A stretch of DNA of 64,000 nt from the IMG/VR virus record IMGVR_UViG_3300032242_000723, positions 62,001-126,000 of that record. One strand, written 5' to 3'. The notes under the pieces were generated by a model, which had not been told where the DNA came from, made no database searches, and was given only the letters and a program-made list of their open reading frames with translations. The translations under genes were made by a program, and so were the position numbers. Position 1 is the first letter of the stretch; each line of letters begins with the position of its first letter. Of this stretch, positions 1,998 through 60,280 are shown in pieces.

Positions 1998-2426
1998 ATG
2001 AAAGATTATTCAATGTCACTTTTCCGCCCCAAATGTGTCGTAGACGGCTGTAACAAATCAGGTCAACACACAGGTCAATATAGAGTAGATGGTACTGTTG
2101 TTTACCGAAAAAAGTGCGGTACACACCATTCAATGGCATATAAAATGGGAGATTGGGTGTACAAAATAAATCGCAAAGATTATTGTGAAAACATCGATGG
2201 TCGTTTGGGATTTGTATGCACTAGTACCATTATTGATATTGCTTGGCAACTGGATGTTGATCACATTGACGGAGACCCATCAAACAACGACCCTAGCAAT
2301 CATCAAACATTATGTAAGTGCTGTCACCCAATCAAGACTCGCAATGAGCGTGATTACATGACGCCAGGACGTAAAACATTGAAAGAGGCAACTACTTTCG
2401 GTAGCGGACTTTTCTGTGACGCTTAA
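1998..2426 (+). CDS. HNH endonuclease with Cys-rich N-terminus
   Basis: LDVDHIDGDPSNNDPSNHQTLCKCCH. Confidence 0.8.
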   Translation: MKDYSMSLFRPKCVVDGCNKSGQHTGQYRVDGTVVYRKKCGTHHSMAYKMGDWVYKINRKDYCENIDGRLGFVCTSTIIDIAWQLDVDHIDGDPSNNDPSNHQTLCKCCHPIKTRNERDYMTPGRKTLKEATTFGSGLFCDA

Positions 2427-17180: not shown

Positions 17181-18350
17181 ATGAACTACTGTTCCTTCTG
17201 CGGAAGCCATAAAGATAAAGTCCGCAAGTTGATTGTGGGTGATGATACTGCGATTTGTAGTGATTGCATTACCTTATGCAACCAACTGATAGAAGAGCGA
17301 GTTCAACAAAGTGTACAAGGTGAGTTTGACGCATATAGTATCAAAGCACATTTGGATGAGCATGTGATTGGTCAAGATTCTGCTAAAGAGGTGATCAGTG
17401 TTGCGATATCAAATCACTATAAACGAATCAACTATCCACCCAAGCATATTGAGATCCAAAAGGGCAATGTGTTATTGATTGGGCCAACTGGTTCTGGTAA
17501 GACATTGCTTGCTCGTGCTGTAGCGAAATATCTAAACGTTCCCTTTGTAGTGGCAGATGCTACTAGCCTGACTGAATCAGGATATGTAGGTGAGGATGTT
17601 GAATCAATGATCTCTACCTTACTATCACTTGCTGACAACGATGTTAGCTTGGCCGAGCGTGGTATCGTGTTCATTGACGAGATTGACAAGATTGCTCGTA
17701 AGAGTGAGAGTGCAAGTCTAACTCGTGATGTAAGCGGCGAAGGTGTGCAACAAGCATTATTGAAACTGGTAGAAGGTACCACTTGCCGCGTAAGTCCTGC
17801 TGGAGTTCGCAAAGGCCCAAACAGTGAGACCGTTGAAGTTAGCACCAAGAACATACTCTTCATAGCAGGTGGAGCCTTTGTTGGCCTTGAAAATATCATA
17901 AAGAGTAGAGTAGGCGGAGCGTCTATAGGATTCAATGCACCGTTGAAGTCTAAGACAAAAACTATTGACTATTCTAATATCGCACCCGGTGATCTTACTA
18001 AGTTTGGAATGATTCCTGAACTGGTTGGTAGATTTACTACGACTATCACATTAGAAGAACTGTCATTAGATCAGTTAGTCTTGGTATTGACTACTGTAAA
18101 AAACAGTTTCATTGAACAATACAAGTACATGTTTGAGATTGATGGTATTCGATTGGTATTTACCGATGAGGCCATTGTAAGAATCGCGCAGAAATGTCTT
18201 GATCTAAAAACAGGTGCTCGTGGATTACATACCGAGATAGAGAAGGTATTAATGCCTCACATGTTCCACATTCACAAGTACTCAAAGAACAAGATAGGCA
18301 AGATCACTATCACTCTTGATCTAGTTGATAATCCAAAATCTTTAGTATAA
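17181..18350 (+). CDS. clpX: ClpX AAA+ unfoldase
   Basis: C4 zinc finger CSFC..ICSDC, Walker A GPTGSGKT, GYVGED pore loop, FIDEIDK, RDVSGEGVQQALLK, IGF loop, TGARGL. Confidence 0.95.
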   Translation: MNYCSFCGSHKDKVRKLIVGDDTAICSDCITLCNQLIEERVQQSVQGEFDAYSIKAHLDEHVIGQDSAKEVISVAISNHYKRINYPPKHIEIQKGNVLLIGPTGSGKTLLARAVAKYLNVPFVVADATSLTESGYVGEDVESMISTLLSLADNDVSLAERGIVFIDEIDKIARKSESASLTRDVSGEGVQQALLKLVEGTTCRVSPAGVRKGPNSETVEVSTKNILFIAGGAFVGLENIIKSRVGGASIGFNAPLKSKTKTIDYSNIAPGDLTKFGMIPELVGRFTTTITLEELSLDQLVLVLTTVKNSFIEQYKYMFEIDGIRLVFTDEAIVRIAQKCLDLKTGARGLHTEIEKVLMPHMFHIHKYSKNKIGKITITLDLVDNPKSLV

Positions 18351-18399
18351 CACCCAAAATACTTTAGTTTTTTACGCAATAGTGTATACTAAATAATGT

Positions 18400-18447
18400 T
18401 GTAGATGCTTAACGGGTCTACAGTAAAAAGTCTTGCTTAAAAGGAGA
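18400..18447 (+). promoter_or_regulatory. Hsp20 5' leader with ROSE-like RNA thermometer
   Basis: TGTAGA/TCTACA hairpin then TCTT(G)CT-TAAA-AGGAGA pairing the SD with a bulged G in UUGCU. Confidence 0.55.
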
Positions 18448-18454
18448 TAAAAAC

Positions 18455-18913
18455 ATGACTAATACACAACTACACCTTCGTGCCCTTGACATTCCGTCAA
18501 TCCATAGATTTGCAGTAGGATTCGATTCAATGATCGATGAACTTATGCGAACTAATGCAGAACAACCAAACACTAACTATCCCCCATATAACGTAATCAA
18601 GCACACAGACGACATGTTCACGATTGAACTGGCTGTGGCTGGCTTTGATGAACAAGACATCAAGATCACCGTTGATAAGAATGTTCTCTTAATCAAAGGT
18701 GAACAGCGTCAGGATGTTGGTGAACTGGATCAAGAAGTTGAATACCTACATCGCGGGATTTCAGCACGAAACTTCACACGTTCGTTTAAACTAGCGGACT
18801 ATGTGGAAGTAGTAAACGCTACTGCTAGTAACGGTATCCTCAAGGTCGAACTTGAGAGACAAGTTCCTGAAGCGGCTAAGCCAAAAACTATTCGCATATC
18901 AAGTAATAAGTGA
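18455..18913 (+). CDS. ibpA: small heat shock protein Hsp20 (IbpA-like)
   Basis: [39 protein letters not shown]...NGILKVEL. Confidence 0.95.
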
Positions 18914-19501
18914 TTTACACTTACTAAAGTGAAAGCGTATCATTCCGGGTTTTCCACCTGATTTGAGGCAGTGAGGGCATGTTATTATAATCTTACTAGG
19001 ATTAATCTGTGATTGGAAATTATGAGTACCATTCGCAAATTGTGCCTTTGCTGCCTCTGATTGCGTCATCGGCGGTTTTCGGTCAGTAATCTTTGTGATC
19101 TTCTTCCGAAACTCTGGTGATTGATTTTTTCTGCGATTTGCCTCTGCTATCTTGGTAGAATCTCGTTTAGGTTTACGCATTTTAGCCTTGTGTTCTTCGC
19201 TCAAAGGTCCATATTTAGGATTCTTTTTGGTATGTTTTGAGGCACCATCTCCGCCGTCTGTTTTGTTGATTAGGATTCCTGTACCAAGGTCTTTTCTTCC
19301 GTACCAACGAATCATTCTACGTTCAATCGCAAGGGCACCGGTATTAGTTAGATTACATTCTAAGAATACGATTTTGGATCTATCTTTAGGAACAGAAACG
19401 CCAGGATGCCTAGCATATGCTCTGTTGTCTTTGCCTTTTCCGATATAATAGGGAGTGTTGTCACTTTTGCGTAGGTACGCATATACGTAATAAATAGTCA
19501 T
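18899..19501 (-). CDS. GIY-YIG-type endonuclease with NUMOD3-like linker and Zn finger
   Basis: YYVY-x-[20 protein letters not shown]; [22 protein letters not shown]. Confidence 0.8.
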
Positions 19502-19569
19502 TGCTGATGCTCCTTCAAAGCGTTAGAGTAGTTGGGTGTTAGCGCACCGTGAACTACATCTTTATTTAG
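19502..19569 (-). promoter_or_regulatory. conserved endonuclease leader copy 3
   Basis: CTAAATAAAGATGTAGTTCACGGTGCGCTAACACCCAACTACTCTAACGCTTTGAAGGAGCATCAGCAATG. Confidence 0.8.
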
Positions 19570-19670
19570 TCCAAAACACTTGCTATTCATAACAATAAAT
19601 AGTATAGTAAATCAATAACCCGTGCTTGCAGTCAATAATGGCTGCAATCACACTAACAAGGATCAATAAC

Positions 19671-19979
19671 ATGGCAAACGCCGAAACAAAAAGCAAGATC
19701 AAGCCTAACCTCGCACTTCGCGAACCTCCTCTTTGGAAGATCATCTATTTCAATGATGAGAAGACCACGATGGAATTCGTTGTTGAATCTTTGGTTGAGT
19801 TCTTTAACTACAACGTGGATACTGCATCAGCCATTACAGTTGATATCCATGAAAACGGCAGTGCGGTAGTCGCAGTATTACCGCATGAGATTGCAGAACA
19901 AAAAGGCGTTGAAGTCACGCTGGATGCACGATCAAAGGGTTATCCCTTGAAGGTCATGGTCGAAGCGGAATCAAACTGA
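19671..19979 (+). CDS. clpS: ClpS N-end-rule adaptor
   Basis: EPPLWKIIYFNDEKTTMEFVV, IHENGSAVV, E.K..EV...AR..GYPL. Confidence 0.9.
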   Translation: MANAETKSKIKPNLALREPPLWKIIYFNDEKTTMEFVVESLVEFFNYNVDTASAITVDIHENGSAVVAVLPHEIAEQKGVEVTLDARSKGYPLKVMVEAESN

Positions 19980-20669
19980 TAAAGTGATACGCTTAGCGTA
20001 GTATGGATTCTTTTTCAAATATGGATTATTGACATAGTTGGTGTTGTTAATCACAACATCAGCACTCTTGTCGTAGGTACCAAATACCCAATGCGTTACT
20101 TTATGTTCGGTATCACTTGACAGTGTATCGCGTAGAGGTATTTGGTCTTCTACGATATCAGGCTTTTCCCCAAAGTATAAATCAGGATGAGGAACTGCAC
20201 CTGTAACAACGATCATCTTCTTGATGTCTAGGTGCTTTTGTAGTTTCCCAATCGCGTTATATAGATAGGCTACATCCTCGTGCCTTGCGGATGCAGGAAG
20301 AAGATTGTCTAATGTGAGAGAATCTCCTACGTTACTCCAACCATTGATACCTACAACAGCGATGCCGTCAATAATGACTACATGTTGATGTAGCATACAT
20401 ACGTTCGGGATAGCCTTAGTAATGGCTATTAACTCTGTTGTACGCTTGCTAATACTTTCTGCTGTTTCATATTCTAAGACACCAGGTACATAGAATACAC
20501 CTTGGTAAAATCTACCTAAGTGTGAAAGTGTTTGCACCACTGTTCGCAAACTTGAACTGATATTGCCTGCTACCAAACAATATAAACTCGTTGCTTTTCC
20601 TTCCCAGTTGAAACTATCATCGGGAGCGAGGTGCAAATCACTTATCAGGTCAAAACCGATATCTTGCAT
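19971..20669 (-). CDS. metallophosphoesterase-fold protein with degenerate metal ligands
   Basis: ISDLHL retained, but AGN for GD and PGVLE for GNHE. Confidence 0.65.
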   Translation of the reverse strand: MQDIGFDLISDLHLAPDDSFNWEGKATSLYCLVAGNISSSLRTVVQTLSHLGRFYQGVFYVPGVLEYETAESISKRTTELIAITKAIPNVCMLHQHVVIIDGIAVVGINGWSNVGDSLTLDNLLPASARHEDVAYLYNAIGKLQKHLDIKKMIVVTGAVPHPDLYFGEKPDIVEDQIPLRDTLSSDTEHKVTHWVFGTYDKSADVVINNTNYVNNPYLKKNPYYAKRITLSV

Positions 20670-20679
20670 GATATAGGTT

Positions 20680-20877
20680 TTACTTTGCTACGTTTAACTT
20701 AGGCTTGCGAGGGGCACGTGGCTTCTTGATTGCTGCTTCTACGACATCTTCAACAGGAGCCTCAACTGGTGCTACCTTTGCAACTGCTTCTACCTTAGGA
20801 GCCTCAGCAACTGTAGTTACTACAGTAGTAGGCGTAGATGGGAAGATAGCACTTAATAACTTCTTTAGAAATGACAT
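20680..20877 (-). CDS. small Ala/Pro/Lys-rich protein
   Basis: 65-aa ORF with AGGAG RBS and TAAATA motif upstream on minus strand. Confidence 0.55.
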   Translation of the reverse strand: MSFLKKLLSAIFPSTPTTVVTTVAEAPKVEAVAKVAPVEAPVEDVVEAAIKKPRAPRKPKLNVAK

Positions 20878-20951
20878 ATAATATTTCTCCTAATAGTCTG
20901 GTTTCTAATAGTATTTATGATAGTATCCGTTTAGATTATAATAAATACATC

Positions 20952-22493
20952 ATGCGTGACATACTTGAAAAACTTGAGACTTTATCCGAAAGCACTGGCC
21001 TAGCTAATCGTAAAGCAGGTGACGTGTTTCGCAATACTGACGGCGATGAGATCACGTTTGATGGTATTGATTTCTACCCTAAAGAAGCAGGTAGATATGA
21101 CAATGAACAGCTAGATCATGCAGTACTTGATATAGGATCAGAAACCGATCATAATCTTAAATGGTTAAACAATCGCACAGGTCGCACTGGCGGATTTGCT
21201 ATTGCAAAGTTTACAGGGAAAGAAGGACCTCTATATTTCGGGCGTTATCTTGAACAGATTAAAGCAGACCCTGTTGATAACTATATTCCTAATCAAATCG
21301 GTGATTATAAACTTGCCAGCAAGGCAGCAGCAAAAGCTCAGTCTGGATTGACCCCACAAGACCTGCTCGTTAATAAGATTGATCTAACAGCGGATGATAT
21401 TCTTGGTCAGCTAGCTGAAACGTTAGGTACCGATAACACTCTTTATGATGTCGCCGCTAAACTAGCTGCAGGTGAGCCGCTTCCCATGACGTTTGATGCA
21501 CCTCCTAACATAAGTTTCTCTGCGTTCCGTGACTACTTTTGCGAGATTCTACAACCAATCGCATTACAAATGGGGCAGTACACGGGCAATGCGGGCGAGG
21601 CTGCTGAAGTCTTCTTAGGTGGAAGTTTTCAAAACACTCTTATCTCGTTTGATGACACGAAGACAGCTGGTCTCAGTGACAGCATTATGACTAACGAAGA
21701 AGGCAAATACATCAAGGTTAGTACTAAGGGCGGTCTCGGCGCGATGGCAAGTACGGCTAATCTAGTCAAGAGTGCTGACGAGCTATCACAAACCGAAAAC
21801 GGTAGAAAGTTAATGGAGAAGTACTCCGAAACTATTGAAATACTACGTGAGATCAAGGACCGAGGGCAGGCACTTGCACCTATATACTTAGGTTTAAAGT
21901 ATGATATTATCGACAGAGAAGATGCTAAGAAAATCATATCGTTAAAGAACGTTAATCCTCAGCCAATGAGTGAGTTAGATAACTTAGGGTTATCAGACAA
22001 TCTGTTAAAGTTAGCCAAAATCAGAAAAACATCTAATCAAGATAGTGTTAACTTCTATTACCTATTACTTGCTGGATTGGCTCAGGAAGCTGCGGACCAA
22101 GTTAATGAACACACTGACTTTAGCAGTACGGCTGCTGACATCTTGAACAACGGGGCACTCATTCAAGTCTATACTAAAGCCAGCGAGAACAAAGGACAAT
22201 GGACTCTAAAAGAGTTTGAAACTGTATACCCAGGTGAAAGCATTAAGGGTGTTTATCTGTCGGCAGCGAAAACGTATTATAGTACTGGTATTAAGGGTAA
22301 CTTCACATTCAAGATCGACAAGGGCAAGGGTCTACCTGAAGATAAACCTGAGTCTAGTATTGGTAGAGAGAAACGAACAGACACCGCTCCCGAGTTTGCT
22401 AAAAAGGCTGGCGACATTGCATTAGGTAGAGATAAACCAAAAAGCAAGGAACCATCTTCAATGGGTAATGTAGGTAGAGAAAAACGCAAATAG
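20952..22493 (+). CDS. large late protein, possible PD-(D/E)xK-like domain
   Basis: ATAAATA directly upstream of ATG 20952; LSDSIM...IKVSTKGG. Confidence 0.65.
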   Translation: MRDILEKLETLSESTGLANRKAGDVFRNTDGDEITFDGIDFYPKEAGRYDNEQLDHAVLDIGSETDHNLKWLNNRTGRTGGFAIAKFTGKEGPLYFGRYLEQIKADPVDNYIPNQIGDYKLASKAAAKAQSGLTPQDLLVNKIDLTADDILGQLAETLGTDNTLYDVAAKLAAGEPLPMTFDAPPNISFSAFRDYFCEILQPIALQMGQYTGNAGEAAEVFLGGSFQNTLISFDDTKTAGLSDSIMTNEEGKYIKVSTKGGLGAMASTANLVKSADELSQTENGRKLMEKYSETIEILREIKDRGQALAPIYLGLKYDIIDREDAKKIISLKNVNPQPMSELDNLGLSDNLLKLAKIRKTSNQDSVNFYYLLLAGLAQEAADQVNEHTDFSSTAADILNNGALIQVYTKASENKGQWTLKEFETVYPGESIKGVYLSAAKTYYSTGIKGNFTFKIDKGKGLPEDKPESSIGREKRTDTAPEFAKKAGDIALGRDKPKSKEPSSMGNVGREKRK

Positions 22494-22573
22494 TGTTTTG
22501 GTAACCAAAACACTTGTAATCCTTAATGAGATATCGTAAGATATAAATCTCAGTAACATAAAAGGATTATTAT

Positions 22574-23164
22574 ATGAGTTTGGTTCCAATCGTACTTGAA
22601 CAAACGGCTCGCGGTGAGCGTTCATACGACATCTATTCCCGTTTGCTACGAGATCGTGTTATTTTGCTTGAGGGCGAAGTGCATGATCAAATGGCAAATC
22701 TTATCGTCGCACAGTTGCTCTATCTTGAGTCAGAAGACTCAGCCACTGACATCTCACTTTACATCAATAGTCCAGGTGGCTCTGTAACTGCTGGCTTAGC
22801 GATTTACGATGCTATGCAGTTCATCAAGCCCGATATCTCAACTATCGTTATGGGACAAGCATGTTCAATGGGGTCGTTTCTTGCTCAAGCAGGTTCTCCA
22901 GGTAAGCGTCTTATGCTTCCATATGCACGTCACATGATTCACCAACCATCTGGTGGTGCTCGTGGTATGCAAAGTGATATTGCAATTCAATACAAAGAAA
23001 TCACACAGATCAAGACGACTCTTACTGAACTTTATGTCCAACATAACTCTAAGGGCAAGACCTACGAAGAGTTTGAGAAGGACATGGATCGCGATACGTT
23101 TATGAGTGCTCAAGAAGCCCTTGATTATGGATTGATTGATCGTATTGTTACTAAGCGTGACTAA
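22574..23164 (+). CDS. clpP: ClpP protease subunit
   Basis: [28 protein letters not shown] (Ser), MIHQP (His), DRDTFMSA (Asp). Confidence 0.97.
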
Positions 23165-23252
23165 AAAGTATATGCAGAAATTGTAGCTTGGGTCTGCACC
23201 TTTATAAGTAATCTTTGCTTATAATAAAAAGCTACACACAAACGGAGATAAA

Positions 23253-25628
23253 ATGAAGTTAAAATATTTACTCGCAGCTACTACTGCTGCACTGTGTCTG
23301 TCTTTCGGGACTGCACATGCAGTTGAGGTTGCTGATGATCCATCAGTGATCGTTATTACCGCAACCAAGCGAGAAACTAATCTAAAGGATACCCCAATCT
23401 CAGTCGTTGTTCAAAACGCACAGAGCCTTCAGGATCGTCACGTTCAAAGTCTAGTTGACTTTGCTGATGGTGCGGTCCCATCGCTTCGCGTTGCAACTTT
23501 TGAGTCACGTCAATCAGCATTGACTATCGGCATTCGTGGTATTGTTCCTTTTGATGCAAATCAAACGGCACGAGATCAGGGCGTTGGTGTTTATCTTGAT
23601 GGCGTCTATCTTGGTCGTCAACAAGGTCTGAATGCAGCATTGTTTGATGTTGATCGTATTGAAGTCCTTCGTGGTCCTCAGGGAACACTCTTCGGTCGTA
23701 ATACTGAAGGTGGTGCATTGTCAATCATCACTAAGCAACCAACTGGTGAGTTCGGTGGCAGTTTGACAGGTGGCATTGGCAACTACGGTAGCTATACTAC
23801 ACAGGCTCACATTGATCTTCCTTCAGTTGCAAACATCGCAGTTAAGGTTGATGGTGTTGTTCAACATCAAGATGCTACGGTGAAGAATATTCTTGCTGGT
23901 CAAACTGGCTGGAACTATCGTCACAATGTCGGTGGAAAGATCACTGCAAAGTGGGAACCTACTGACAACTTCTCGGCTACGGTATCATACGATAACGTAC
24001 ACGACAAGAACACGCCAAACTATAGCCAACTGATCAACTACAACCCAACGAATAAGACTGTTGGTAAGTATGATACAGTGACTAACAAGCTGGTTGCACC
24101 TACTGCACCTACTGGCACTTCAACTGTTTGTGCGACTTGTATTGCCCCTCTCTCACGCCTCGTGTATGTGAGTGGTACTGATCGTCAATCAGTTGCTGAA
24201 ATCGGCGTTCCACAACAGCCTAGCATTGGTGACTCAAATGGTTACTCTGCTAATCTGAAGTACACGGTTTCACCAACACTGGAACTTCGCTCTATCACTG
24301 CAAAGCGTAGGGTAACTACTGAACAGTGGGACAACTCGGGCGGCGCACATAGAACGATCTTTGCTCCTAATGCAAACTTCAGCCGGTACAGTCTGTCGCA
24401 TTTGTATCAAGATCAAGTCAGCCAAGAATTCCAAGCAGTAGGCGAATTGCCTAAGTTGGATTATGTTGTTGGTCTGTACTACTTCAAGGAACATGTTCAA
24501 GAATATGCGGCAACTGCATCCACTAATAAGTGGAACGCAACTGGTACTGCATATACGATCAACAGCCCATCGGTAGCAGGAGCAATCACTTCTTCTAACA
24601 ATGGTTGGAATCCTTACTCTTGGTTCTTTGCGCGAAACAGCCGAGCAACTTCTGAAAGCAAAGCCGCTTTCGCTCAAGCAACTTGGACACCAGTTGAAAA
24701 GGTTCACTTGACTGTTGGTGGTCGTTATACAGAAGACAAGCGTAATGGTGCGTTGACTGTTGTATCTGGTGTTGCTACTCCTTGGAAGTTGAAGTTTGAT
24801 AAGTCACGCTTTGATCCAATGGTAACGGTTGCGGTTGATGCTACTGATCATATCAATGCATATGCTAAGTATTCAACTGGCTATCGTGCTGGTGGTGCAA
24901 ATGATCGTTCTTCACGATTTAGTGCATTCGGTCCAGAATCTGTTACAGCGTATGAAATCGGTACTAAGGCAAATATGTTCGACAACACTGTCAATCTAAA
25001 TGTCGCAGGTTATATGATGGATCGCACTGGAACTCAGATTGACTTTGACCACGTTGATACTTCACCCTATCTTGCTGATGGCGTGACTAAGAACCCAACT
25101 TTCAATCTTCACACCGAAGATACTGCGAATGCTCCTGGCACTTCAAAGATTCGTGGTGCTGAAGTTGAATTGACTGTTCGTCCAACTAACCGACTATCGT
25201 TTGGTACGTCTTATGCGTATACATATACTAACATCCCTGCTACTCTGAACCCACAAACTGGTGCATTGACTAAGGTGTTCGTTGTGTACACTCCTAAGAA
25301 TGCGGCAGCAGCTTATGTTGACTATCGTATCCCACTCAAGAACGATGCTCGTGTAGAACTACACGCCGATGCTAACTACTCTGATGCAGTTTACAGTTTC
25401 CAGAATGAAAATGTACTGACACAGCCTAGCTTCATCGTCAACGGTCGGGTTGCTCTTGCTAACCTCTCTGTTGCTAATCAGAAGACTTCTGTCTCACTTT
25501 GGGGCAGAAATATTCTAGACGAGACGCATGTTTATCGTAGGTCTGATGCTAATATCACGACTCTCGGTTCTTATGCAAACTTCAATCCACCTCGCACTTT
25601 CGGTGTAGAAGTGAATACGAAGTTCTAA
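23253..25628 (+). CDS. TonB-dependent outer-membrane receptor
   Basis: Signal peptide, IVITATKRE TonB-box region, IRG, VYLDGV, IEVLRGPQGTLFGRN..GGA plug motifs, C-terminal PRTFGVEVNTKF. Confidence 0.93.
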   Translation: MKLKYLLAATTAALCLSFGTAHAVEVADDPSVIVITATKRETNLKDTPISVVVQNAQSLQDRHVQSLVDFADGAVPSLRVATFESRQSALTIGIRGIVPFDANQTARDQGVGVYLDGVYLGRQQGLNAALFDVDRIEVLRGPQGTLFGRNTEGGALSIITKQPTGEFGGSLTGGIGNYGSYTTQAHIDLPSVANIAVKVDGVVQHQDATVKNILAGQTGWNYRHNVGGKITAKWEPTDNFSATVSYDNVHDKNTPNYSQLINYNPTNKTVGKYDTVTNKLVAPTAPTGTSTVCATCIAPLSRLVYVSGTDRQSVAEIGVPQQPSIGDSNGYSANLKYTVSPTLELRSITAKRRVTTEQWDNSGGAHRTIFAPNANFSRYSLSHLYQDQVSQEFQAVGELPKLDYVVGLYYFKEHVQEYAATASTNKWNATGTAYTINSPSVAGAITSSNNGWNPYSWFFARNSRATSESKAAFAQATWTPVEKVHLTVGGRYTEDKRNGALTVVSGVATPWKLKFDKSRFDPMVTVAVDATDHINAYAKYSTGYRAGGANDRSSRFSAFGPESVTAYEIGTKANMFDNTVNLNVAGYMMDRTGTQIDFDHVDTSPYLADGVTKNPTFNLHTEDTANAPGTSKIRGAEVELTVRPTNRLSFGTSYAYTYTNIPATLNPQTGALTKVFVVYTPKNAAAAYVDYRIPLKNDARVELHADANYSDAVYSFQNENVLTQPSFIVNGRVALANLSVANQKTSVSLWGRNILDETHVYRRSDANITTLGSYANFNPPRTFGVEVNTKF

Positions 25629-25724
25629 AAATACTTTGATCAGGCTAGACCACAGCTTTTGCTGAGTCTGGTCAAAGTCTCAGGCTTCGGCTTGAGTGGC
25701 GAGGGTGATAACACACTCCAGAGA

Positions 25725-25753
25725 ATACCCTCGATAGAAATATCGGGGGTATT
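25725..25753 (+). terminator. intrinsic terminator-like hairpin, copy 1 of a 29-bp direct repeat
   Basis: ATACCCTCGAT-AGAA-ATATCGGGGGTATT, identical to 26901-26929. Confidence 0.7.
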
Positions 25754-25813
25754 CTTGTATTACACTACAAGTGTACTAAATAAGTTTACACACAGAGAGA
25801 GAAAAGGTGGTGC

Positions 25814-26875
25814 ATGTCAAAAATTCTATTCATTCTAAAACGCCGTGAAGATTACAGTGCAATACTGCACGATCAAGTTGGCCTGAGCACAGGTCTTTTT
25901 AATAGTGCTACTTTTGTTAATGATATGCTAATAAATGCTGGCATTGAAAGCATTCTTGAAGTCGCAATTGATAATAATTGCATTGATGGATTAGTGAACA
26001 AACATAAACCTACTCATGTTATAATTGAAGCACTGTGGGTGGTTCCATCTAAATTTGAAGTATTATGCAAACTACATCCTGATGTAACATGGATCATTCG
26101 CTTACATAGCGAAATGCCGTTCATGGCTGGCGAAGGCATCGCGATGGAGTGGATTGGTGAATATAGTAAGTTTAAGAATATTGTTATCGGGGTAAATGCG
26201 CCTCGTATGATGCGTGAAGTGCAAATGTATTTACGTCATTTGAACGGTTGGTCAAAGAAAGAAACAGCCAATCGTGTTATCTATATGCCAAACTATTATC
26301 CACAAAAATATAAATCAGTACGAAAAATTAATAAGAAAAAGAATACAATTGATATTGCGTGTTTTGGTGCTATTCGTCCTCTTAAAAATCATCTAACCCA
26401 GGCATTTGCTGCTATTGAATTTGCAGAAAGTATAGATAAAAAGTTACGTTTCCATATTAATGCAGGGCGTATTGAAATGAATGGTAGTCCTGTACTCAAT
26501 AATCTCAAAGGCCTGTTTGATCAAATATGTGCTCGTGGTCATATCCTAGTTGATCATCAATGGTCACTGCATGAAGAATTCTTAGAACTATGTGGCAAGA
26601 TGGATATTGGATTGCAATCTAGTTTCAGCGAGACGTTTAACATTGTTGGTGCAGACTTGATCAGTCAAGGTGTTCCATTAGTAAGTAGCCCTGAAATACC
26701 ATGGGCCGTTCCTTTGTTTGAAGCAGATCCAACCGAAACCAAACATATAGTAAAAAAACTAAAATTAGCATATAACTTTAACTGGTTAAATGTGAAATTA
26801 CATCAATGTGAATTAACAAAATACACTAACAAAACAAAAAAGATTTGGATCAAGCACTTTAAACGAAAGAAATAA
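25814..26875 (+). CDS. GT-B glycosyltransferase (GT4-like)
   Basis: IACFGAIRPLKN, DIGLQSSFSETFNIVGAD..SQGVPLVSS. Confidence 0.8.
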   Translation: MSKILFILKRREDYSAILHDQVGLSTGLFNSATFVNDMLINAGIESILEVAIDNNCIDGLVNKHKPTHVIIEALWVVPSKFEVLCKLHPDVTWIIRLHSEMPFMAGEGIAMEWIGEYSKFKNIVIGVNAPRMMREVQMYLRHLNGWSKKETANRVIYMPNYYPQKYKSVRKINKKKNTIDIACFGAIRPLKNHLTQAFAAIEFAESIDKKLRFHINAGRIEMNGSPVLNNLKGLFDQICARGHILVDHQWSLHEEFLELCGKMDIGLQSSFSETFNIVGADLISQGVPLVSSPEIPWAVPLFEADPTETKHIVKKLKLAYNFNWLNVKLHQCELTKYTNKTKKIWIKHFKRKK

Positions 26876-26900
26876 ACAAATATAATTTCAACCTATAACG

Positions 26901-26934
26901 ATACCCTCGATAGAAATATCGGGGGTATTTTTTT
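26901..26934 (+). terminator. intrinsic terminator, copy 2 of the 29-bp direct repeat
   Basis: Same hairpin followed by a T-run. Confidence 0.8.
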
Positions 26935-26956
26935 GATTAGACCGGCAAGAAAAAGG

Positions 26957-26985
26957 TTGACATCATTTACCCGTTTTGCTATATT
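26957..26985 (+). promoter_or_regulatory. early sigma70-type promoter
   Basis: TTGACA-17-TATATT. Confidence 0.8.
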
Positions 26986-27015
26986 GAGTCATAGATTGAA
27001 ACAAGGAAAAAAGAA

Positions 27016-27159
27016 ATGACTGTGCAAGAGTTGATGGAAGTTTTGAAGAACTTGGATCCGAACAAAGAGGTATGGATTCATAACGGAGAGTGGGATTCAT
27101 ATGATCGTCTGAACTGCGCGGAAATGGATGAAGATGGTGATTTGGTGTTGTATCCGTAA
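27016..27159 (+). CDS. 47-aa MTVxEL-type small protein (not in ORF track)
   Basis: MTVQELMEVLKNLDPNKEV; paralogous to 28712-28864. Confidence 0.6.
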   Translation: MTVQELMEVLKNLDPNKEVWIHNGEWDSYDRLNCAEMDEDGDLVLYP

Positions 27160-27179
27160 TTTTATTGGAAAGGAGAAGA

Positions 27180-27473
27180 ATGATGTGGCAGTTTGAGTTT
27201 GAGGCTCCTGTAAAGACACGGATCCTGCGTAATCATTTCTTTGGCATTCAGCATTACAGTGCGGTTGATAAATGGTTTTCACCAGGGCAAAAGAAGTGGT
27301 TGCCTGTTGATGATATTGAACGCACCCAAGGATTCAGTAACACCGCTACTTGCTCTTCGTTCAAAGCATTCAAGCGTCATCTGCGTAAGAATCCTGAACT
27401 ACAAGAGTGCGGTGAAGTGGTTTTGCAAAGTCGGTTTATGGGTCATAATATTATTGCAAAATGGATTGTGTAA
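27180..27473 (+). CDS. hypothetical protein
   Basis: AAGGAG RBS; 97-aa ORF. Confidence 0.6.
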   Translation: MMWQFEFEAPVKTRILRNHFFGIQHYSAVDKWFSPGQKKWLPVDDIERTQGFSNTATCSSFKAFKRHLRKNPELQECGEVVLQSRFMGHNIIAKWIV

Positions 27474-27619
27474 TGCCAAACGGTTATGTTATTGTTCATT
27501 ACAAAGATGATGGTTGCCATAACTGCGAAGATGATTTGAAGTTTTTAGACTCAGATAATATTTGTATAACTTGTGGCACTGAGTGGGAGCCAGATGAAAG
27601 TTATGAGGAGTGGACTTAA
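27473..27619 (+). CDS. 48-aa zinc-ribbon protein (not in ORF track)
   Basis: CHNC...CITC; TAATG overlap. Confidence 0.5.
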   Translation: MPNGYVIVHYKDDGCHNCEDDLKFLDSDNICITCGTEWEPDESYEEWT

Positions 27620-27640
27620 TGGCATTGAGGATTAAGGAAA

Positions 27641-28168
27641 ATGGAAAAAGTGTTACAACATCTACGCGAACGGCATCTTGATGTGGATCTTCACCGACCA
27701 GTCATTGATGAAGTTGAAGGTGTTGCAACACTTTTCCTATGGAATCTGTCAGGCGCACTTGTCGGCTATCAACAGTATCGTCCACACGCAAGTAAGGCTG
27801 TTAACAACGATGTTCGTTTGGGCCGTTACTTTACTCGTGTAAAGCAGCCCACAATCGCTGTGTGGGGCGTTGAGAGCTTGGACCTGACACCACATGTAGT
27901 ATTTGTCACAGAAGGCGTGTTTGACGCTGCACGACTAACATCGCGTGGCTACAGTGCTATCGCGGTGTTGTCAAATGATCCCAAGCGTGAACTGCGTAAC
28001 TGGTTGAAGTCATTGGCTCGCAAGGTTGTTGTCGTATGTGATAACGATAGTGCAGGTCGGCGTTTGGCTAAGTTTGGTGATGTTGTCGCATTCACTGAAG
28101 AAAAAGATTTAGGTGACAGTTCCGACGAGTTTGTGACTACCCTATTGGAAAAGTACGGAAGCGTTTAA
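27641..28168 (+). CDS. Toprim-domain (primase-like) protein
   Basis: VFVTEGVFDA, VVCDNDSAG, KDLGD. Confidence 0.85.
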   Translation: MEKVLQHLRERHLDVDLHRPVIDEVEGVATLFLWNLSGALVGYQQYRPHASKAVNNDVRLGRYFTRVKQPTIAVWGVESLDLTPHVVFVTEGVFDAARLTSRGYSAIAVLSNDPKRELRNWLKSLARKVVVVCDNDSAGRRLAKFGDVVAFTEEKDLGDSSDEFVTTLLEKYGSV

Positions 28169-28387
28169 ATGGCTATGCGAGTTAAGTTTAACAGAGAGCC
28201 AGGTGATGACGATCTGGCGTGGTTTTCAAAACATATCGGGCCGCGGACACACTGGCTGATGACAAAGCGTGGTGGAGTAGGTTGGGAATTTCAGTGGGAT
28301 AACGATGGTGCAGGGCGGCGGCAATGGTTCCTCACTGTTGATGACGAATACGGGAAGATATTGACATACTATTTGTTGATGCGATAA
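28169..28387 (+). CDS. small protein, paralog of 32271-32492, distantly LRWS-like C-terminus
   Basis: WF..HIGP...GGVGWEF...WFLTVDD...LTYYLL. Confidence 0.65.
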   Translation: MAMRVKFNREPGDDDLAWFSKHIGPRTHWLMTKRGGVGWEFQWDNDGAGRRQWFLTVDDEYGKILTYYLLMR

Positions 28388-28412
28388 AAACATCCTTGAT
28401 CTACCTTTTCGG

Positions 28413-28441
28413 TTGACATCAGTTACCCGTTTCGCTATATT
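28413..28441 (+). promoter_or_regulatory. early promoter cassette
   Basis: TTGACA-17-TATATT followed by GAATCATAGACA..CACAC..AACGGA RBS leader. Confidence 0.85.
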
Positions 28442-28478
28442 GAATCATAGACAAACACACAGAAACGGAACTACTCAA

Positions 28479-28700
28479 ATGGTTTATCAAGTCGCACAAA
28501 AGTCTAAAGTTGACGATATCTCGTTTCTCGCTGAACGCATCATCAATGGTCTTGATCCTGCTAAGAACTATGTTGTTCAAGGTGAGTTTGAAACTTACGC
28601 TCAGGCACAAGAGTTTCTAGCATATCTGGATGGTATCGCAGATATGATCATTGATAAGTTGGGTTCGGTTTCTTTCTATAACTTCATCGTTCGGGCTTAG
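28479..28700 (+). CDS. hypothetical early protein
   Basis: ATG 28479 after cassette leader. Confidence 0.6.
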   Translation: MVYQVAQKSKVDDISFLAERIINGLDPAKNYVVQGEFETYAQAQEFLAYLDGIADMIIDKLGSVSFYNFIVRA

Positions 28701-28711
28701 GAGTAAAGATA

Positions 28712-28864
28712 ATGACTGTCGCAGAACTTATTGAACAACTTCAAAAGATGCCTCAGAATGCGTGGGTCCAGGTTCTTGCAAACGGATATGATGGGTCATT
28801 ATGTAGGAGCGCCGATAGTGTGTCTATTAATGAAGTAGAACTCGTGGTTTATATCGAGGGATAA
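28712..28864 (+). CDS. 50-aa MTVxEL-type small protein (not in ORF track)
   Basis: AGGAG RBS; MTVAELIEQLQKMPQNA. Confidence 0.6.
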   Translation: MTVAELIEQLQKMPQNAWVQVLANGYDGSLCRSADSVSINEVELVVYIEG

Positions 28865-28872
28865 AATAACGG

Positions 28873-28901
28873 TTGACATCAGTTACCCGTTTTGCTATAT
28901 T
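28873..28901 (+). promoter_or_regulatory. early promoter cassette
   Basis: TTGACA-17-TATATT, nearly identical to 28413-28441. Confidence 0.85.
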
Positions 28902-28938
28902 GAATCATAGACAGACACACATAAACGGAGTTATTCAC

Positions 28939-29148
28939 ATGACTACATCTTGCACACACTTTGTTGGATTCAAGGACGATGCCTTTAACCGTGCTATTCA
29001 AGTGTTCGGTCTTCCTGACTTCATTCACCGTCAATGGGACGGTCGTGCTAAGAGCATGATCGCCGAATGTGACCGTGTTGTATTCGCTAAGGGCACTGAA
29101 CAAGATGTGCCTTATATGTATTCGTTTGACGACTCGGGAGTATTCTAA
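28939..29148 (+). CDS. hypothetical early protein
   Basis: GGAG RBS; HFVGFK.D....A..VFG.PDFIH..WD.RA. Confidence 0.65.
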   Translation: MTTSCTHFVGFKDDAFNRAIQVFGLPDFIHRQWDGRAKSMIAECDRVVFAKGTEQDVPYMYSFDDSGVF

Positions 29149-39684: not shown

Positions 39685-40320
39685 ATGGCACTCGTATACA
39701 AAATAACCAACTTAGAAAACAAAAAGGTTTACATCGGGTGGACCTCCAAAACGCTTGATCAGCGTTGGAATGCACATGTTCACTGTGCATTGAAAAACCA
39801 AGATAACCGAAAGTTTTATAATGCTATTCGTAAATATAAATTAGAAAGTTGGAAAACAGAAATAATTTGTGAGGTAGAGACAAATGATATCGCCAAGCAA
39901 AAAGAAATAGAATACATTGCCATCTTTGATTCGTATAACAAAGGATACAATGCTACTAAGGGAGGAGATGGTAATAACGGTATAATAATGTCAGCAGAAT
40001 CTAATCTCCGTAGAAGCAAAGCCCTCAAGGGGATTCCTAAATCCGAAGATACTGTACAAAAATTCAAGAACAGAAAATCTACACCTGAAGAAAACCTAAG
40101 GCGGAGTCAATCACATCTTGGTACAAAAAAACCTTGGGTTAAATGGAACAAGGAACAAGTAGCAAAAAGAGCGATGACCAGAAGAAGCCTTACTAAAGAA
40201 CAATTTGATCACATACATCTACTAAGAGACGAAGGATTGTTAATAAGAGAGATTGCTGAAAAGACTAATCTAACTAACGATTTAGTGAAAAAATGGTTGA
40301 AGAGGGTTTGGGATTTATAA
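39685..40320 (+). CDS. GIY-YIG homing endonuclease with NUMOD3-like and HTH-like C-terminus
   Basis: LVYKITN...VYIGWT, RW..H, KEIEYI, GYN.TKGGDG; lacks the 70-nt leader of the other four. Confidence 0.85.
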   Translation: MALVYKITNLENKKVYIGWTSKTLDQRWNAHVHCALKNQDNRKFYNAIRKYKLESWKTEIICEVETNDIAKQKEIEYIAIFDSYNKGYNATKGGDGNNGIIMSAESNLRRSKALKGIPKSEDTVQKFKNRKSTPEENLRRSQSHLGTKKPWVKWNKEQVAKRAMTRRSLTKEQFDHIHLLRDEGLLIREIAEKTNLTNDLVKKWLKRVWDL

Positions 40321-41269: not shown

Positions 41270-41824
41270 ATGTTAGAGTTTATCAAGGTACTTGAAGGTA
41301 AAAGCAAATCTACTGATTTGGAAATAATCCCACTGAACTTCACCAAGCGTGATGTCTCATCCGTTATGAGCGGAGCAACTCTTGACCTGCATTATGATAA
41401 GTTGGCTAAGGGTTATGCTAAGCGTTATAATGAAAAAGAAGGTGATCCGGACTTCAACTATGCGGGTGCGTTCTTACATAATCTTTGGTTCCCACAGTTT
41501 AGAAAAGTCGCATTAAACAATACACCAAACGGTCCTATGAAGGGCTTCATAGATAAGCACTATGGTTCTTTTGACAGTTTCAAGGACAAGTTTGAAGAGA
41601 TAGCGATGAAGATACAAGGCTCAGGTTGGGTCTATCTTGCTTACGATGGTAACATCAAAACAATCAAGAATCATGAAGTCAAGAGTGACATTCTACTGTT
41701 AGTGGACTGGTGGGAGCACTCGTTTGTGCTGGATTATGGCTCAGACAAAAAGGCCTACTTGCGTAACCTTTGGAAGATCATTAACTGGAATGTGATTTCT
41801 ACCAGGTGGGGCAAGTCACTATGA
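41270..41824 (+). CDS. sod: Fe/Mn superoxide dismutase
   Basis: LHY (His ligand 1), FLHN (His 2), QGSGW, DWWEH (Asp/His ligands). Confidence 0.85.
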   Translation: MLEFIKVLEGKSKSTDLEIIPLNFTKRDVSSVMSGATLDLHYDKLAKGYAKRYNEKEGDPDFNYAGAFLHNLWFPQFRKVALNNTPNGPMKGFIDKHYGSFDSFKDKFEEIAMKIQGSGWVYLAYDGNIKTIKNHEVKSDILLLVDWWEHSFVLDYGSDKKAYLRNLWKIINWNVISTRWGKSL

Positions 41825-43773: not shown

Positions 43774-44112
43774 ATGATAAATACTGATATGATCACATTA
43801 ACAGTATCAGCACAAAATAAAGTCGCTAAGGTGCTAGCAGAAGAAATACCAAATGCAAGACTTAGACTATATGTCTCTGGCAAAGGTTGTGCTGGGATGA
43901 CATATGGCTTTGCTATAGCAGAAGAACTTGAAGAAGGTGATACTGAGATTCAATCAGGTCCAGTTGTCGTAGTGATTGATCCAGAATCAATGCCCTATTT
44001 AAAAGGTGCAATCGTTGATTTTAAAGAGGATTTAACTGGTTCTCGCTTTGCTATAATCAACCCTAATGCCAAGTCCAGTTGTGGTTGCGGAGATAGTTTC
44101 CAGCCTTATTGA
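43774..44112 (+). CDS. iscA: A-type Fe-S carrier (IscA/ErpA, HesB family)
   Basis: GKGCAGMTY, VDF, NPNAKSSCGCGDSF. Confidence 0.9.
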   Translation: MINTDMITLTVSAQNKVAKVLAEEIPNARLRLYVSGKGCAGMTYGFAIAEELEEGDTEIQSGPVVVVIDPESMPYLKGAIVDFKEDLTGSRFAIINPNAKSSCGCGDSFQPY

Positions 44113-60038: not shown

Positions 60039-60113
60039 TGGAGCGGGCAGAGGGATTCGAACCCTCGACATTTACCTTGGCAAGGTAACGCTCTACCACT
60101 GAGCTATGCCCGC
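60039..60113 (-). tRNA. trnG-GCC: tRNA-Gly(GCC)
   Basis: GCGGGCA/TGCCCGC acceptor, TTACC-TTGCCAA-GGTAA anticodon arm, GGTTCGAATCC, encoded CCA. Confidence 0.95.
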
Positions 60114-60121
60114 ATTATTCT

Positions 60122-60196
60122 TGGAGCGGATGACAGGGGTCGAACCTGCGACGAACAGCTTGGAAGGCTGACACTCTACCACTGAGTTACATCCGC
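60122..60196 (-). tRNA. trnG-TCC: tRNA-Gly(TCC)
   Basis: GCGGATG/CATCCGC acceptor, CAGC-CTTCCAA-GCTG, GGTTCGACC, encoded CCA. Confidence 0.95.
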
Positions 60197-60203
60197 GTTA
60201 TAT

Positions 60204-60280
60204 TGGATGCGGGAGAGGGATTTGAACCCCCGATCTTTTGGTTATGAGCCAAACGAGCCACCGGACTGCTCCACCCCGCG
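60204..60280 (-). tRNA. trnM-CAT: tRNA-Met(CAT), initiator-like
   Basis: CGCGGGGTGGAGCAG start with C1:A72 mismatch, TTTGG-CTCATAA-CCAAA, GGTTCAAATCC, encoded CCA. Confidence 0.9.

What the first reader, a model, noticed from the sequence alone, without database searches (positions are those of the whole stretch)
23253..25628. Intact TonB-dependent receptor carried by the phage
Seen: complete 791-aa ORF with signal peptide, plug motifs and terminal Phe, own RBS and downstream terminator. Established: TBDRs import siderophores, B12 or carbohydrates and are frequent phage receptors; they are abundant in Caulobacter/Sphingomonas-like bacteria. Inference: nutrient acquisition during a long infection (fits SOD and IscA nearby as iron-linked genes), or competition for TonB/receptor sites giving superinfection exclusion.
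Basis: partly seen in the sequence, partly recalled or inferred. Interest (0 to 1): 0.6.

Follow-up and report, generated by a model that had tools for sequence, protein, structure and literature searches.

The report
Jumbo phage carries host-derived TonB receptor
A 333-kb freshwater phage really does carry an intact outer-membrane nutrient transporter gene taken from Sphingomonadales bacteria, kept under selection but present in only some strains; similar genes in huge phages have been reported recently, and what this one does during infection is untested.

Summary
Window 23253-25628 (+) encodes a 791-aa TonB-dependent receptor with signal peptide, TonB box, plug, predicted barrel fold and terminal Phe.

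It lies 85 kb inside a 333-kb virus contig with T4-type capsid and portal genes, 28 tRNAs and 41% GC. It is not a chimera: four separately assembled contigs show the same junctions. Its GC3 (0.35) fits the phage, not its bacterial kin (0.57-0.84).

Its nearest relatives are four other phage copies (73-76% identity). This clade is nested in a core TBDR of Sphingomonadales that had one strong copy in each of five genomes checked. Related phages carry two further clades of the same gene, each with its own Sphingomonadales sister, so one phage clade is rejected (p-AU 6e-36).

The signal-peptide end follows the phage lineage while the mature part follows the TBDR clade. This points to allele swapping at fixed loci.

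Phage copies are under purifying selection (dN/dS about 0.1). They keep 231 of 252 bacterial near-invariant positions.

Contigs from two of four freshwater metagenomes lack the gene exactly, cut at a 7-bp direct repeat.

The phage has no TonB, ExbB or ExbD. Most likely it is an optional uptake gene run by host TonB. Substrate and expression are unknown. Huge-phage TBDRs were reported in 2021 and 2026.

The parts
22574..23164 (+). ClpP protease gene, the upstream neighbour. Its stop codon lies inside the left border repeat.
   Evidence: Pfam CLP_protease, E 9e-79. The same neighbour is seen in four assemblies. It is 88% identical to the ClpP that precedes the TBDR in the collinear phage contig L023.
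23161..23167 (+). Left copy of the 7-bp direct repeat CTAAAAA at the cassette border.
   Evidence: Sequence read. Contigs of runs X2 and X6 join 23165 to 25630.
23168..23252 (+). Upstream spacer that belongs to the cassette, with GGAG at 23244-23247. No sigma-70-type promoter was called here.
   Evidence: sequence; no promoter match upstream of the ATG; the spacer is absent together with the gene in X2 and X6.
23253..25628 (+). TonB-dependent receptor gene, 791 aa (P0001).
23253..23321 (+). Signal peptide (residues 1-23, AHA then V24). This end resembles the signal peptides of clade-B copies of the same phage lineage more than those of other clade-A copies.
   Evidence: By inspection. Signal-region identity is 67% to clade-B P0139 but 41% to clade-A P0002. 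DNA alignment.
23343..23366 (+). TonB box (residues 31-38), only about 8 residues after the signal-peptide cleavage site.
   Evidence: Alignment A1. The box starts at about residue 31 in phage copies and at 55-58 in bacterial kin.
23382..23717 (+). Plug domain (residues 44-155).
   Evidence: Pfam PF07715, 57.3 bits. Identity is 91% among phage copies and 82% to the nearest bacterial kin.
23733..25625 (+). Beta-barrel with long loops (residues about 161-791), ending in Phe.
   Evidence: Pfam PF00593. Model strands and Foldseek matches to solved TonB-dependent transporters.
25625..25631 (+). Right copy of the direct repeat CTAAAAA. It includes the TBDR stop codon.
25633..25752 (+). Three terminator-like hairpins. 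The last one (28 nt, 25725-25752) recurs only once more in the genome, at 26901-26928.
   Evidence: z -7.85; exactly two copies. The second copy was called terminator-like.
25814..26875 (+). Downstream 353-aa ORF, bracketed by the two hairpin copies. It is not tied to the TBDR: present without it in X2, absent beside it in X5, absent in L023.
   Evidence: No Pfam or PHROG match. Glycosyltransferase-like by Atlas features only, which is a lead. for the presence and absence.

Best explanation
The gene is a real, working copy of a host outer-membrane TonB-dependent transporter that lives in a jumbo phage of freshwater Sphingomonadales. It descends from one particular core TBDR of these bacteria. 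That TBDR had one strong copy in each of five genomes checked.

The phage copy has been in phage genomes long enough to take on phage base composition. It has also lost the long Ala/Asp-rich linker that precedes the TonB box in bacteria.

It sits as an optional cassette directly after ClpP, in a region of replication, nucleotide-metabolism and proteostasis genes.

Inferred mechanism: the protein is made in the infected cell, exported by Sec and inserted by the host BAM machinery. It is energised by host TonB-ExbB-ExbD, because the phage has none of these. It imports the same, still unknown substrate as the host orthologue. This would keep up or raise uptake while host gene expression is shut down during a long infection.

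Related phages carry other alleles of the same gene. These alleles have been exchanged at fixed loci, with the recipient's own signal-peptide end kept.
For: Shown:
- Phage context. T4-type capsid and portal genes are on the same 333-kb contig, which has 28 tRNAs and 41% GC.
- Continuity. The same protein with the same neighbours appears on four separately assembled contigs. In run X5 a copy differing at about 5-7% of bases bridges the ClpP-TBDR border.
- Composition. GC3 is 0.25-0.44 in phage copies, following their own flanks, against 0.57-0.84 in bacterial homologues.
- Origin. The five phage copies form one clade (support 100). It is sister to a bacterial sequence and nested in Sphingomonadales TBDRs.
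- Multiple alleles. Two more phage clades each have their own Sphingomonadales sister (Sphingorhabdus; 'Sphingomonas fennica'). A single phage clade is rejected, with delta lnL 554 and p-AU 6e-36.
- Copy number in bacteria. Five Sphingomonadales genomes each have one strong copy among 27-94 TBDR-like candidates.
- Constraint. dN is 0.15-0.19 and dS 1.2-2.3 among phage copies. Of 252 columns conserved in at least 97% of 105 bacterial sequences, 231 are unchanged in all five phage copies. The plug and long loops are as conserved as in bacteria. The TonB box is intact.
- Dependence on the host. No TonB_C, ExbB or ExbD was found in the phage, and only one Plug domain.
- Optional cassette. X2 and X6 contigs join 23165 to 25630 at a CTAAAAA repeat.
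- Mosaic 5' end and collinear loci that carry different alleles.

Inferred: export, insertion, TonB coupling, transport, and a benefit to the phage.
Against: - No expression data exist. All listed public runs that hold the stretch are DNA.
- No sigma-70-type promoter was found upstream.
- The substrate is unknown. The protein misses every NCBIfam cut-off. It is at most 17% identical to any solved transporter. Bacterial neighbourhoods show only an OmpR/PhoB-type two-component system.
- The phage carries no inner-membrane or periplasmic partner that I recognised.
- Close relatives do without the gene, so any benefit is conditional.
- Outer-membrane proteins are stable. An extra copy may therefore add little uptake in a short infection.
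- Allele swapping is also what one expects of genes involved in phage-host or phage-phage recognition.
Confidence: 0.55

Rival explanations
1. Receptor-landscape device. The host orthologue is the receptor of this phage group or of its competitors. The phage copy changes adsorption to infected cells, for example by superinfection exclusion, by acting as a decoy, or by protecting progeny. Nutrient import is not the point.
For: - TBDRs are classic phage receptors; this is established knowledge, and FhuA complexes with T5 proteins were among the fold matches.
- The same orthologue appears in three phage clades.
- Alleles track different host lineages and are swapped between phage lineages.
- Presence and absence vary among close strains. 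This pattern is typical of recognition and exclusion genes.
- The 2026 preprint proposes this role for huge-phage outer-membrane proteins.
Against: - Adding more receptor should increase adsorption to infected cells and debris, not reduce it.
- The TonB box and plug, which face the periplasm, are as conserved as in bacteria. A pure surface role would not require this.
- The loops are conserved rather than diversified, in both phage and bacteria.
- My searches were seeded with this family, so 'always the same orthologue' is partly due to how I looked.
Confidence: 0.2
2. TonB titration. The protein matters mainly as a carrier of a TonB box. It ties up host TonB and so blocks TonB-dependent entry of other phages or bacteriocins.
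For: - The TonB box is strictly conserved and sits closer to the N-terminus than in bacteria.
- The phage has no TonB of its own.
Against: The whole 791-aa protein is under purifying selection, including loops and barrel. A short periplasmic peptide would be enough for titration.
Confidence: 0.07
3. A passenger gene with no role for the phage, picked up by chance in a plastic region.
For: - It lies in a region of cassette gain and loss.
- Close relatives lack it.
Against: - It is fully adapted to phage composition.
- dN/dS is about 0.1 across phage copies that differ at most synonymous sites.
- It is kept in at least three phage clades and dozens of sequence clusters, on contigs up to 337 kb.
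Confidence: 0.05
4. Assembly chimera or host contamination of the viral contig.
For: The gene is bacterial in origin, and some relatives lack it.
Against: - The junctions are identical in four assemblies made with different pipelines.
- A diverged copy in X5 bridges the ClpP border.
- The gene is 85 kb from the nearest contig end.
- GC3 of 0.35 matches the phage and not the 0.57-0.84 of bacterial kin.
- Homologues sit between phage genes in more than 20 IMG/VR contigs.
Confidence: 0.01

Closest known systems
The core TonB-dependent receptor of Sphingomonadales, one strong copy per genome checked (unnamed; annotated 'TonB-dependent receptor' or 'iron complex outermembrane receptor protein')
   Same: It is 62-70% identical over 96% of the length. 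It shares the TonB box, plug, loops, a Cys pair in the long loop and the C-terminal Phe. Of 252 bacterial near-invariant columns, 231 are kept.
   Different: The phage copy has a different, short signal peptide and lacks the 20-50-residue Ala/Asp-rich linker before the TonB box. It lacks 4 residues in one late loop. It has phage codon composition. It has no adjacent two-component system.
22-stranded outer-membrane proteins and TonB-dependent receptors of huge phages (bioRxiv 10.64898/2026.10.24.761521), and the SusC-like TBDR of marine megaphage Mar_Mega_1 (PMC9723777)
   Same: These are host-type TonB-dependent receptors encoded by phages over 200 kb, many from freshwater. They have a signal peptide and were proposed to act as uptake genes or receptor-landscape modifiers.
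   Different: Those reports are surveys or annotations. The examples they detail belong to Bacteroidota-type systems (Lak phage, SusC). I could not check whether this genome is in their set. The Sphingomonadales origin, the three clades, the swapped alleles with retained signal peptide and the exact presence/absence cassette are described here.
Siderophore and metallophore transporters with solved structures: FyuA (4epa), Fiu, FhuE, FoxA, FhuA
   Same: Plug-in-barrel fold. Foldseek gives E 4.6e-39 and TM-score 0.85 (normalised by target) for FyuA. The plug also matches by sequence, E 1.7e-16.
   Different: Identity is at most 17%, the barrel is larger (791 aa) and there is no sequence-level match outside the plug. 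The substrate cannot be transferred. TIGR01783 scores 120 bits against a cut-off of 223.5.
Cyanophage nutrient-uptake genes such as PstS (auxiliary metabolic genes; from my own knowledge)
   Same: A host-derived envelope component of nutrient uptake, carried by a T4-type phage and presumably expressed during infection.
   Different: This is an outer-membrane active transporter that needs host TonB. It is not a periplasmic binding protein, and no regulation or expression data exist.

Membership tests
TonB-dependent receptor/transporter (TBDT) | N-terminal Sec signal peptide | tested here: inconclusive
   By eye, residues 1-23 have a basic n-region, a hydrophobic core and AHA before the cleavage site. 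No predictor was run. All phage and bacterial homologues have a comparable N-terminus.
TonB-dependent receptor/transporter (TBDT) | TonB box near the mature N-terminus | tested here: met
   Residues 31-38 align with the invariant TonB-box block of the family. The motif was found at residues 26-58 in every clade-B phage copy and in four of five clade-A copies. The window's own copy reads I-T-A-T where the search pattern expected V-T-A-T.
TonB-dependent receptor/transporter (TBDT) | Plug domain (PF07715) over the Pfam cut-off | tested here: met
   57.3 bits against 23.9, residues 44-155. Also found by the genome-wide family search.
TonB-dependent receptor/transporter (TBDT) | Beta-barrel (PF00593) enclosing the plug | tested here: met
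   PF00593 scores 96.9 bits against 27. The AF2 model has pLDDT 84.9 and pTM 0.85. More than 300 Foldseek matches at E <= 0.001 to solved TonB-dependent transporters. I did not count the strands on coordinates.
TonB-dependent receptor/transporter (TBDT) | C-terminal aromatic residue (beta-signal for BAM) | tested here: met
   The protein ends in Phe, as do all 18 aligned homologues.
TonB-dependent receptor/transporter (TBDT) | Energy coupling to TonB-ExbB-ExbD and actual transport | not testable with these tools
   The phage encodes no TonB_C, ExbB or ExbD. Coupling to the host complex is inferred from the conserved TonB box.
TonB-dependent siderophore receptor subfamily (TIGR01783) | Score over the curated cut-off | tested here: not met
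   120.3 bits against 223.5. All equivalog models are far under their cut-offs. It should not be filed as a siderophore receptor.
FecA-type TonB-dependent transducers | N-terminal signalling extension before the TonB box | tested here: not met
   Only about 8 residues lie between the signal peptide and the TonB box. No extra Pfam domain was found.
SusC-type TBDT (as in Mar_Mega_1 and Lak phages) | SusC-type extra N-terminal domain and a SusD partner gene next to it (from my own knowledge of the family) | tested here: not met
   Pfam finds only Plug and barrel. The neighbours are ClpP and an ORF without Pfam or PHROG matches. The relatives are Alphaproteobacteria.
Phage auxiliary (host-derived) gene | Host-type gene flanked on both sides by phage genes on one contig, with bacterial homologues as outgroup | tested here: met
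Phage auxiliary (host-derived) gene | Expressed during infection, with an effect on host metabolism | not testable with these tools
   No run on record as RNA holds the stretch.

The most novel reading that the evidence does not exclude
The slot after ClpP (and a second slot in a sister lineage) may be a host-matching module. These phages would keep their own translation start and signal peptide, and repeatedly replace the mature receptor with the orthologue of whichever Sphingomonadales lineage they infect. They would do so because the phage needs a host-matched copy of one specific outer-membrane transporter. That transporter could be the molecule that the phage group or its competitors use for entry, so the gene would act in adsorption control as well as, or instead of, nutrition.
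Probability: 0.15. Interest if true: 0.8.

Novelty: new member of a known kind. Interest (0 to 1): 0.55.

Why it matters
Phage-borne TonB-dependent receptors have so far been reported from surveys only. This locus offers a well-defined natural experiment with three useful properties:
- Close phage variants exist with and without the gene, differing by an exact 2.46-kb cassette.
- Several alleles each point to a different Sphingomonadales host lineage.
- The bacterial orthologue appears to be single-copy, so it can be knocked out and complemented in culturable Novosphingobium or Sphingorhabdus.

That makes the open question directly testable: do large phages remodel the outer membrane to feed the infected cell, or to control who can adsorb to it?

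The gene is also a host marker for an abundant, uncultured group of freshwater jumbo phages.

Tried and rejected
- Megablast of 20000-29000 against GenBank phages found no match.
- tblastn of the protein against GenBank phages gave only five weak hits (at most 33% identity). None was in an isolate related to this phage.
- The IMG/VR scan with the single protein found nothing. The scan with an alignment found 21 loci.
- The sigma-70 promoter scan found nothing upstream of the gene. I looked by eye for T4 middle or late promoter motifs and found nothing convincing, so the time of expression is left open.
- The search for RNA runs found none.
- Substrate from bacterial gene neighbourhoods: no siderophore, ABC-importer or FecIR genes. 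Only an OmpR/PhoB-type regulator appears in 45 of 80 loci. A kinase is closest to the CztS/SilS/CopS subfamily but scores under its cut-off. This is a faint hint of metal sensing and no more.
- Host clue from the phage SOD: all 120 best relatives are unnamed metagenomic proteins, many on contigs of about 320-333 kb. It says nothing about the host.
- In tree 2 the row L057 was mistranslated by my coordinates (21 stops) and should be ignored.
- The sliding-window DNA comparison of the 5' end was blurred by the five-sequence alignment. The mosaic claim rests.
- Complex prediction (TonB box with host TonB) was not run.
Full report
**1. The observation**

Window 23253-25628 (+) is one open frame of 791 codons, from ATG to TAA. 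GGAG lies 5 nt before the start. The product begins with a typical Sec signal (cleavage after AHA at residue 23, by inspection) and ends in Phe.

Pfam finds a Plug domain at residues 44-155 and the TonB-dependent receptor barrel at residues 325-754. Both score well over their cut-offs. NCBIfam places it nearest the siderophore-receptor subfamily, but at 120 bits against a cut-off of 223.5, and no equivalog model comes close.

An AlphaFold2 model built on 110 homologues has mean pLDDT 84.9 and pTM 0.85. It matches solved TonB-dependent transporters: FyuA at E 4.6e-39, then Fiu, FhuE, FoxA and FhuA. Sequence identity is at most 17%.

Three strong hairpins follow the stop codon (z -7.85).

**2. 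It is a phage gene, not an artefact**

The window is bases 62001-126000 of a 333,115-bp virus record that CheckV rates 92% complete. The gene lies 85 kb from the nearest contig end. The contig also encodes a T4-type major capsid protein and portal and 28 tRNAs, and it has 41% GC. The capsid is 65-73% identical to those of jumbo phages such as Sinorhizobium phage Phosso, Vibrio phage 2.275.O and Pseudomonas phage PA5oct.

The identical protein, with the same neighbours on both sides, occurs on four separately assembled contigs from different sources: 333,583 bp, 90,660 bp, 12,110 bp, and a fourth contig with the same neighbours that the look-up did not list separately.

GC3 of the gene is 0.35 and follows the phage flanks. 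In bacterial homologues it is 0.57-0.84.

**3. Where it came from**

The best 120 homologues fall into two groups. Four are proteins of 788-791 aa at 73-76% identity. The rest are Sphingomonadales receptors of 800-845 aa at 61-70% identity, from Novosphingobium, Sphingomonas, Sphingobium and Hephaestia.

The context of three of the four close homologues was examined, and all three sit in phage-like DNA:
- P0002 lies between T4-type replication and RNA-ligase genes on a 69-kb contig.
- P0004 lies after an Hsp20 gene on a contig with 38% GC in the flanks.
- P0003 is on a short contig with 42% GC in the flanks.

In a maximum-likelihood tree the five copies form one clade (support 100). It is sister to a bacterial sequence from a 53% GC contig with housekeeping genes. 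The whole group is nested among Sphingomonadales sequences.

**4. A wider set of phage alleles**

Scanning IMG/VR with an alignment found 21 viral contigs with relatives at 48-53% identity. All have low GC, and their flanking ORFs match this phage's proteins.

One of them, L023, is collinear with the window: DNA ligase, ClpX, Hsp20, ClpS, two conserved unknown ORFs, then ClpP (88% identical), then the TBDR, then the Toprim gene. The flanking proteins are 60-88% identical, but the TBDR is only 52% identical.

That second type has about 78 close sequence clusters, on contigs up to 337 kb. Its nearest bacterial relatives, at 73-74% identity, are Sphingorhabdus.

A joint tree shows three phage clades, each with its own Sphingomonadales sister. 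Forcing all phage rows into one clade costs 554 log-likelihood units (p-AU 6e-36).

In five Sphingomonadales genomes there is one strong match each, among 27-94 TBDR-like candidates. The three clades are therefore versions of one orthologous core gene, not different paralogues. One caveat applies: my searches were seeded with this family. Other TBDR types also occur on viral contigs, for example L035 at 26% and L036 at 38% identity. I therefore cannot say that phages prefer this orthologue.

**5. Mosaic structure**

In all three phage clades the TonB box starts at residues 21-33. In the bacterial relatives it starts at residues 55-58, because they carry a long Ala/Asp-rich linker.

The signal-peptide end groups by phage lineage and locus, not by TBDR clade:
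- The window copy (clade A) is 67% identical in this region to P0139 (clade B) but 54% in the mature part.
- L002 (clade A) and L019 (clade B) share gene order. They are 69% identical in the signal region and 57% in the mature part.
- The two clade-A copies, window and L002, are 41% identical in the signal region and 78% in the mature part.

The DNA alignment shows the same pattern. The simplest reading is that mature parts were exchanged between phage lineages, or with host genes. The crossover would lie in the highly conserved TonB-box and plug region, so the recipient kept its own 5' end. This is an inference from a region of only about 30 residues.

**6. An optional cassette**

I laid contigs of four freshwater metagenomes on 22400-27000.
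- In runs X2 and X6, from different studies, a contig joins 23165 to 25630 with one extra T. These contigs run straight from the ClpP stop codon to the base after the TBDR stop codon and skip 2,464 bp.
- Both borders read CTAAAAA, at 23161-23167 and 25625-25631.
- In X4 the flanks are covered but the gene is not.
- In X5 the gene is present, differing at about 5-7% of bases, and is joined to ClpP. There the downstream 353-aa ORF is skipped instead.

Contigs show presence better than absence. Even so, the explicit joints show that close relatives without the gene exist.

**7. Is it still a transporter?**

Among phage copies dN is 0.15-0.19 and dS is 1.2-2.3, so dN/dS is roughly 0.1 with dS near saturation.

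Of 252 alignment columns conserved in at least 97% of 105 bacterial sequences, 231 are unchanged in all five phage copies. Only two columns are changed in all five (Q45K; R581 to N or S).

The plug (91% identity among phage copies) and the long loops are as conserved as in bacteria, and more so than the membrane strands. The TonB box is intact. The phage has no TonB, ExbB or ExbD and no second Plug domain.

This pattern fits a protein that still binds TonB and a ligand. It does not fit a mere surface decoy or a TonB-box carrier.

**8. What it transports is open**

Bacterial neighbourhoods show no siderophore, ABC-importer or FecIR genes. The commonest neighbour, in 45 of 80 loci, is an OmpR/PhoB-type response regulator. 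The paired kinase is nearest the CztS/SilS/CopS heavy-metal subfamily but scores under its cut-off.

Both are real but lie 16-18 kb away.

**9. Comparison with what is known**

A putative SusC-type TBDR was noted in the marine megaphage Mar_Mega_1 (PMC9723777). [quoted passage not shown] It proposes remodelling of the receptor landscape (10.64898/2026.10.24.761521). The kind is thus already described, and this genome may even be in that set.

What is added here:
- the Sphingomonadales origin;
- the three clades of one orthologue;
- the shortened N-terminus in all three clades;
- the retained signal-peptide end;
- the exact presence/absence cassette.

No GenBank phage isolate carries a close homologue.

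**10. Verdict**

The best-supported function is conditional uptake through host TonB (confidence about 0.55). A role in adsorption control is the main rival (about 0.2). The finding is a new member of a recently described kind, and it is unusually well suited to experiment.

Noticed in passing
window 17181-23164: The phage carries its own proteostasis set: ClpX (17181-18350), Hsp20 (18455-18913), ClpS (about 19626-19979) and ClpP (22574-23164). The set is conserved in order in the related viral contig L023.
   Followed up: partly
window 25725-25752 and 26901-26928: An identical 28-nt hairpin occurs exactly twice in the 333-kb genome and brackets the 353-aa ORF 25814-26875. In run X5 this ORF is skipped (joint 25629 to 26901), so it looks like a second cassette.
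   Followed up: partly
window 25814-26875: The 353-aa ORF has no Pfam or PHROG match. By language-model features it resembles phage and bacterial family-1/4 glycosyltransferases (a lead only). It has no signal peptide.
   Followed up: partly
window 41270-41824 and 43774-44112: An Fe/Mn superoxide dismutase and an IscA-type Fe-S assembly protein lie here. The SOD has well over 100 sequence clusters of 184-aa metagenomic relatives, many on contigs of about 320-333 kb. This phage group therefore appears large and widespread.
   Followed up: partly
window 60039-60280, and G000 122-144 kb: Three tRNA genes (Gly-GCC, Gly-UCC, Met) form the start of a 28-tRNA region on the minus strand.
   Followed up: no
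window 26858-26985: Two strong sigma-70-like promoters lie just after the second hairpin (10/12, and 11/12 with TG). They would start the next block of small genes. No such site precedes the TBDR.
   Followed up: no
window 1998-2426 and 39685-40320: HNH- and GIY-YIG-type endonuclease genes lie among replication and nucleotide-metabolism genes. They are possible homing endonucleases and fit a plastic region.
   Followed up: no
L035:10001-12151 and L036:5633-7126: Other viral contigs carry TonB-dependent receptors of different families: 26% identity on a 102-kb contig and 38% on a 21-kb contig. Phage TBDRs are therefore not limited to the orthologue studied here.
   Followed up: no
L111, L105, L088 (genome contigs): Records titled Arthrobacter sp. 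TPD3018, uncultured Bordetella and uncultured Gammaproteobacteria carry this Sphingomonadales-type receptor at 54-58% identity to the clade-B query (the L023 receptor). Mislabelled or contaminated assemblies are likelier than true occurrence.
   Followed up: no
L002:6670-7245 and G000 149279-149821: An AhpC/peroxiredoxin gene is shared at 70-75% identity by this phage and by the TBDR-bearing contigs L002, L016 and L019. Together with the SOD, this gives the group an oxidative-stress gene set.
   Followed up: no
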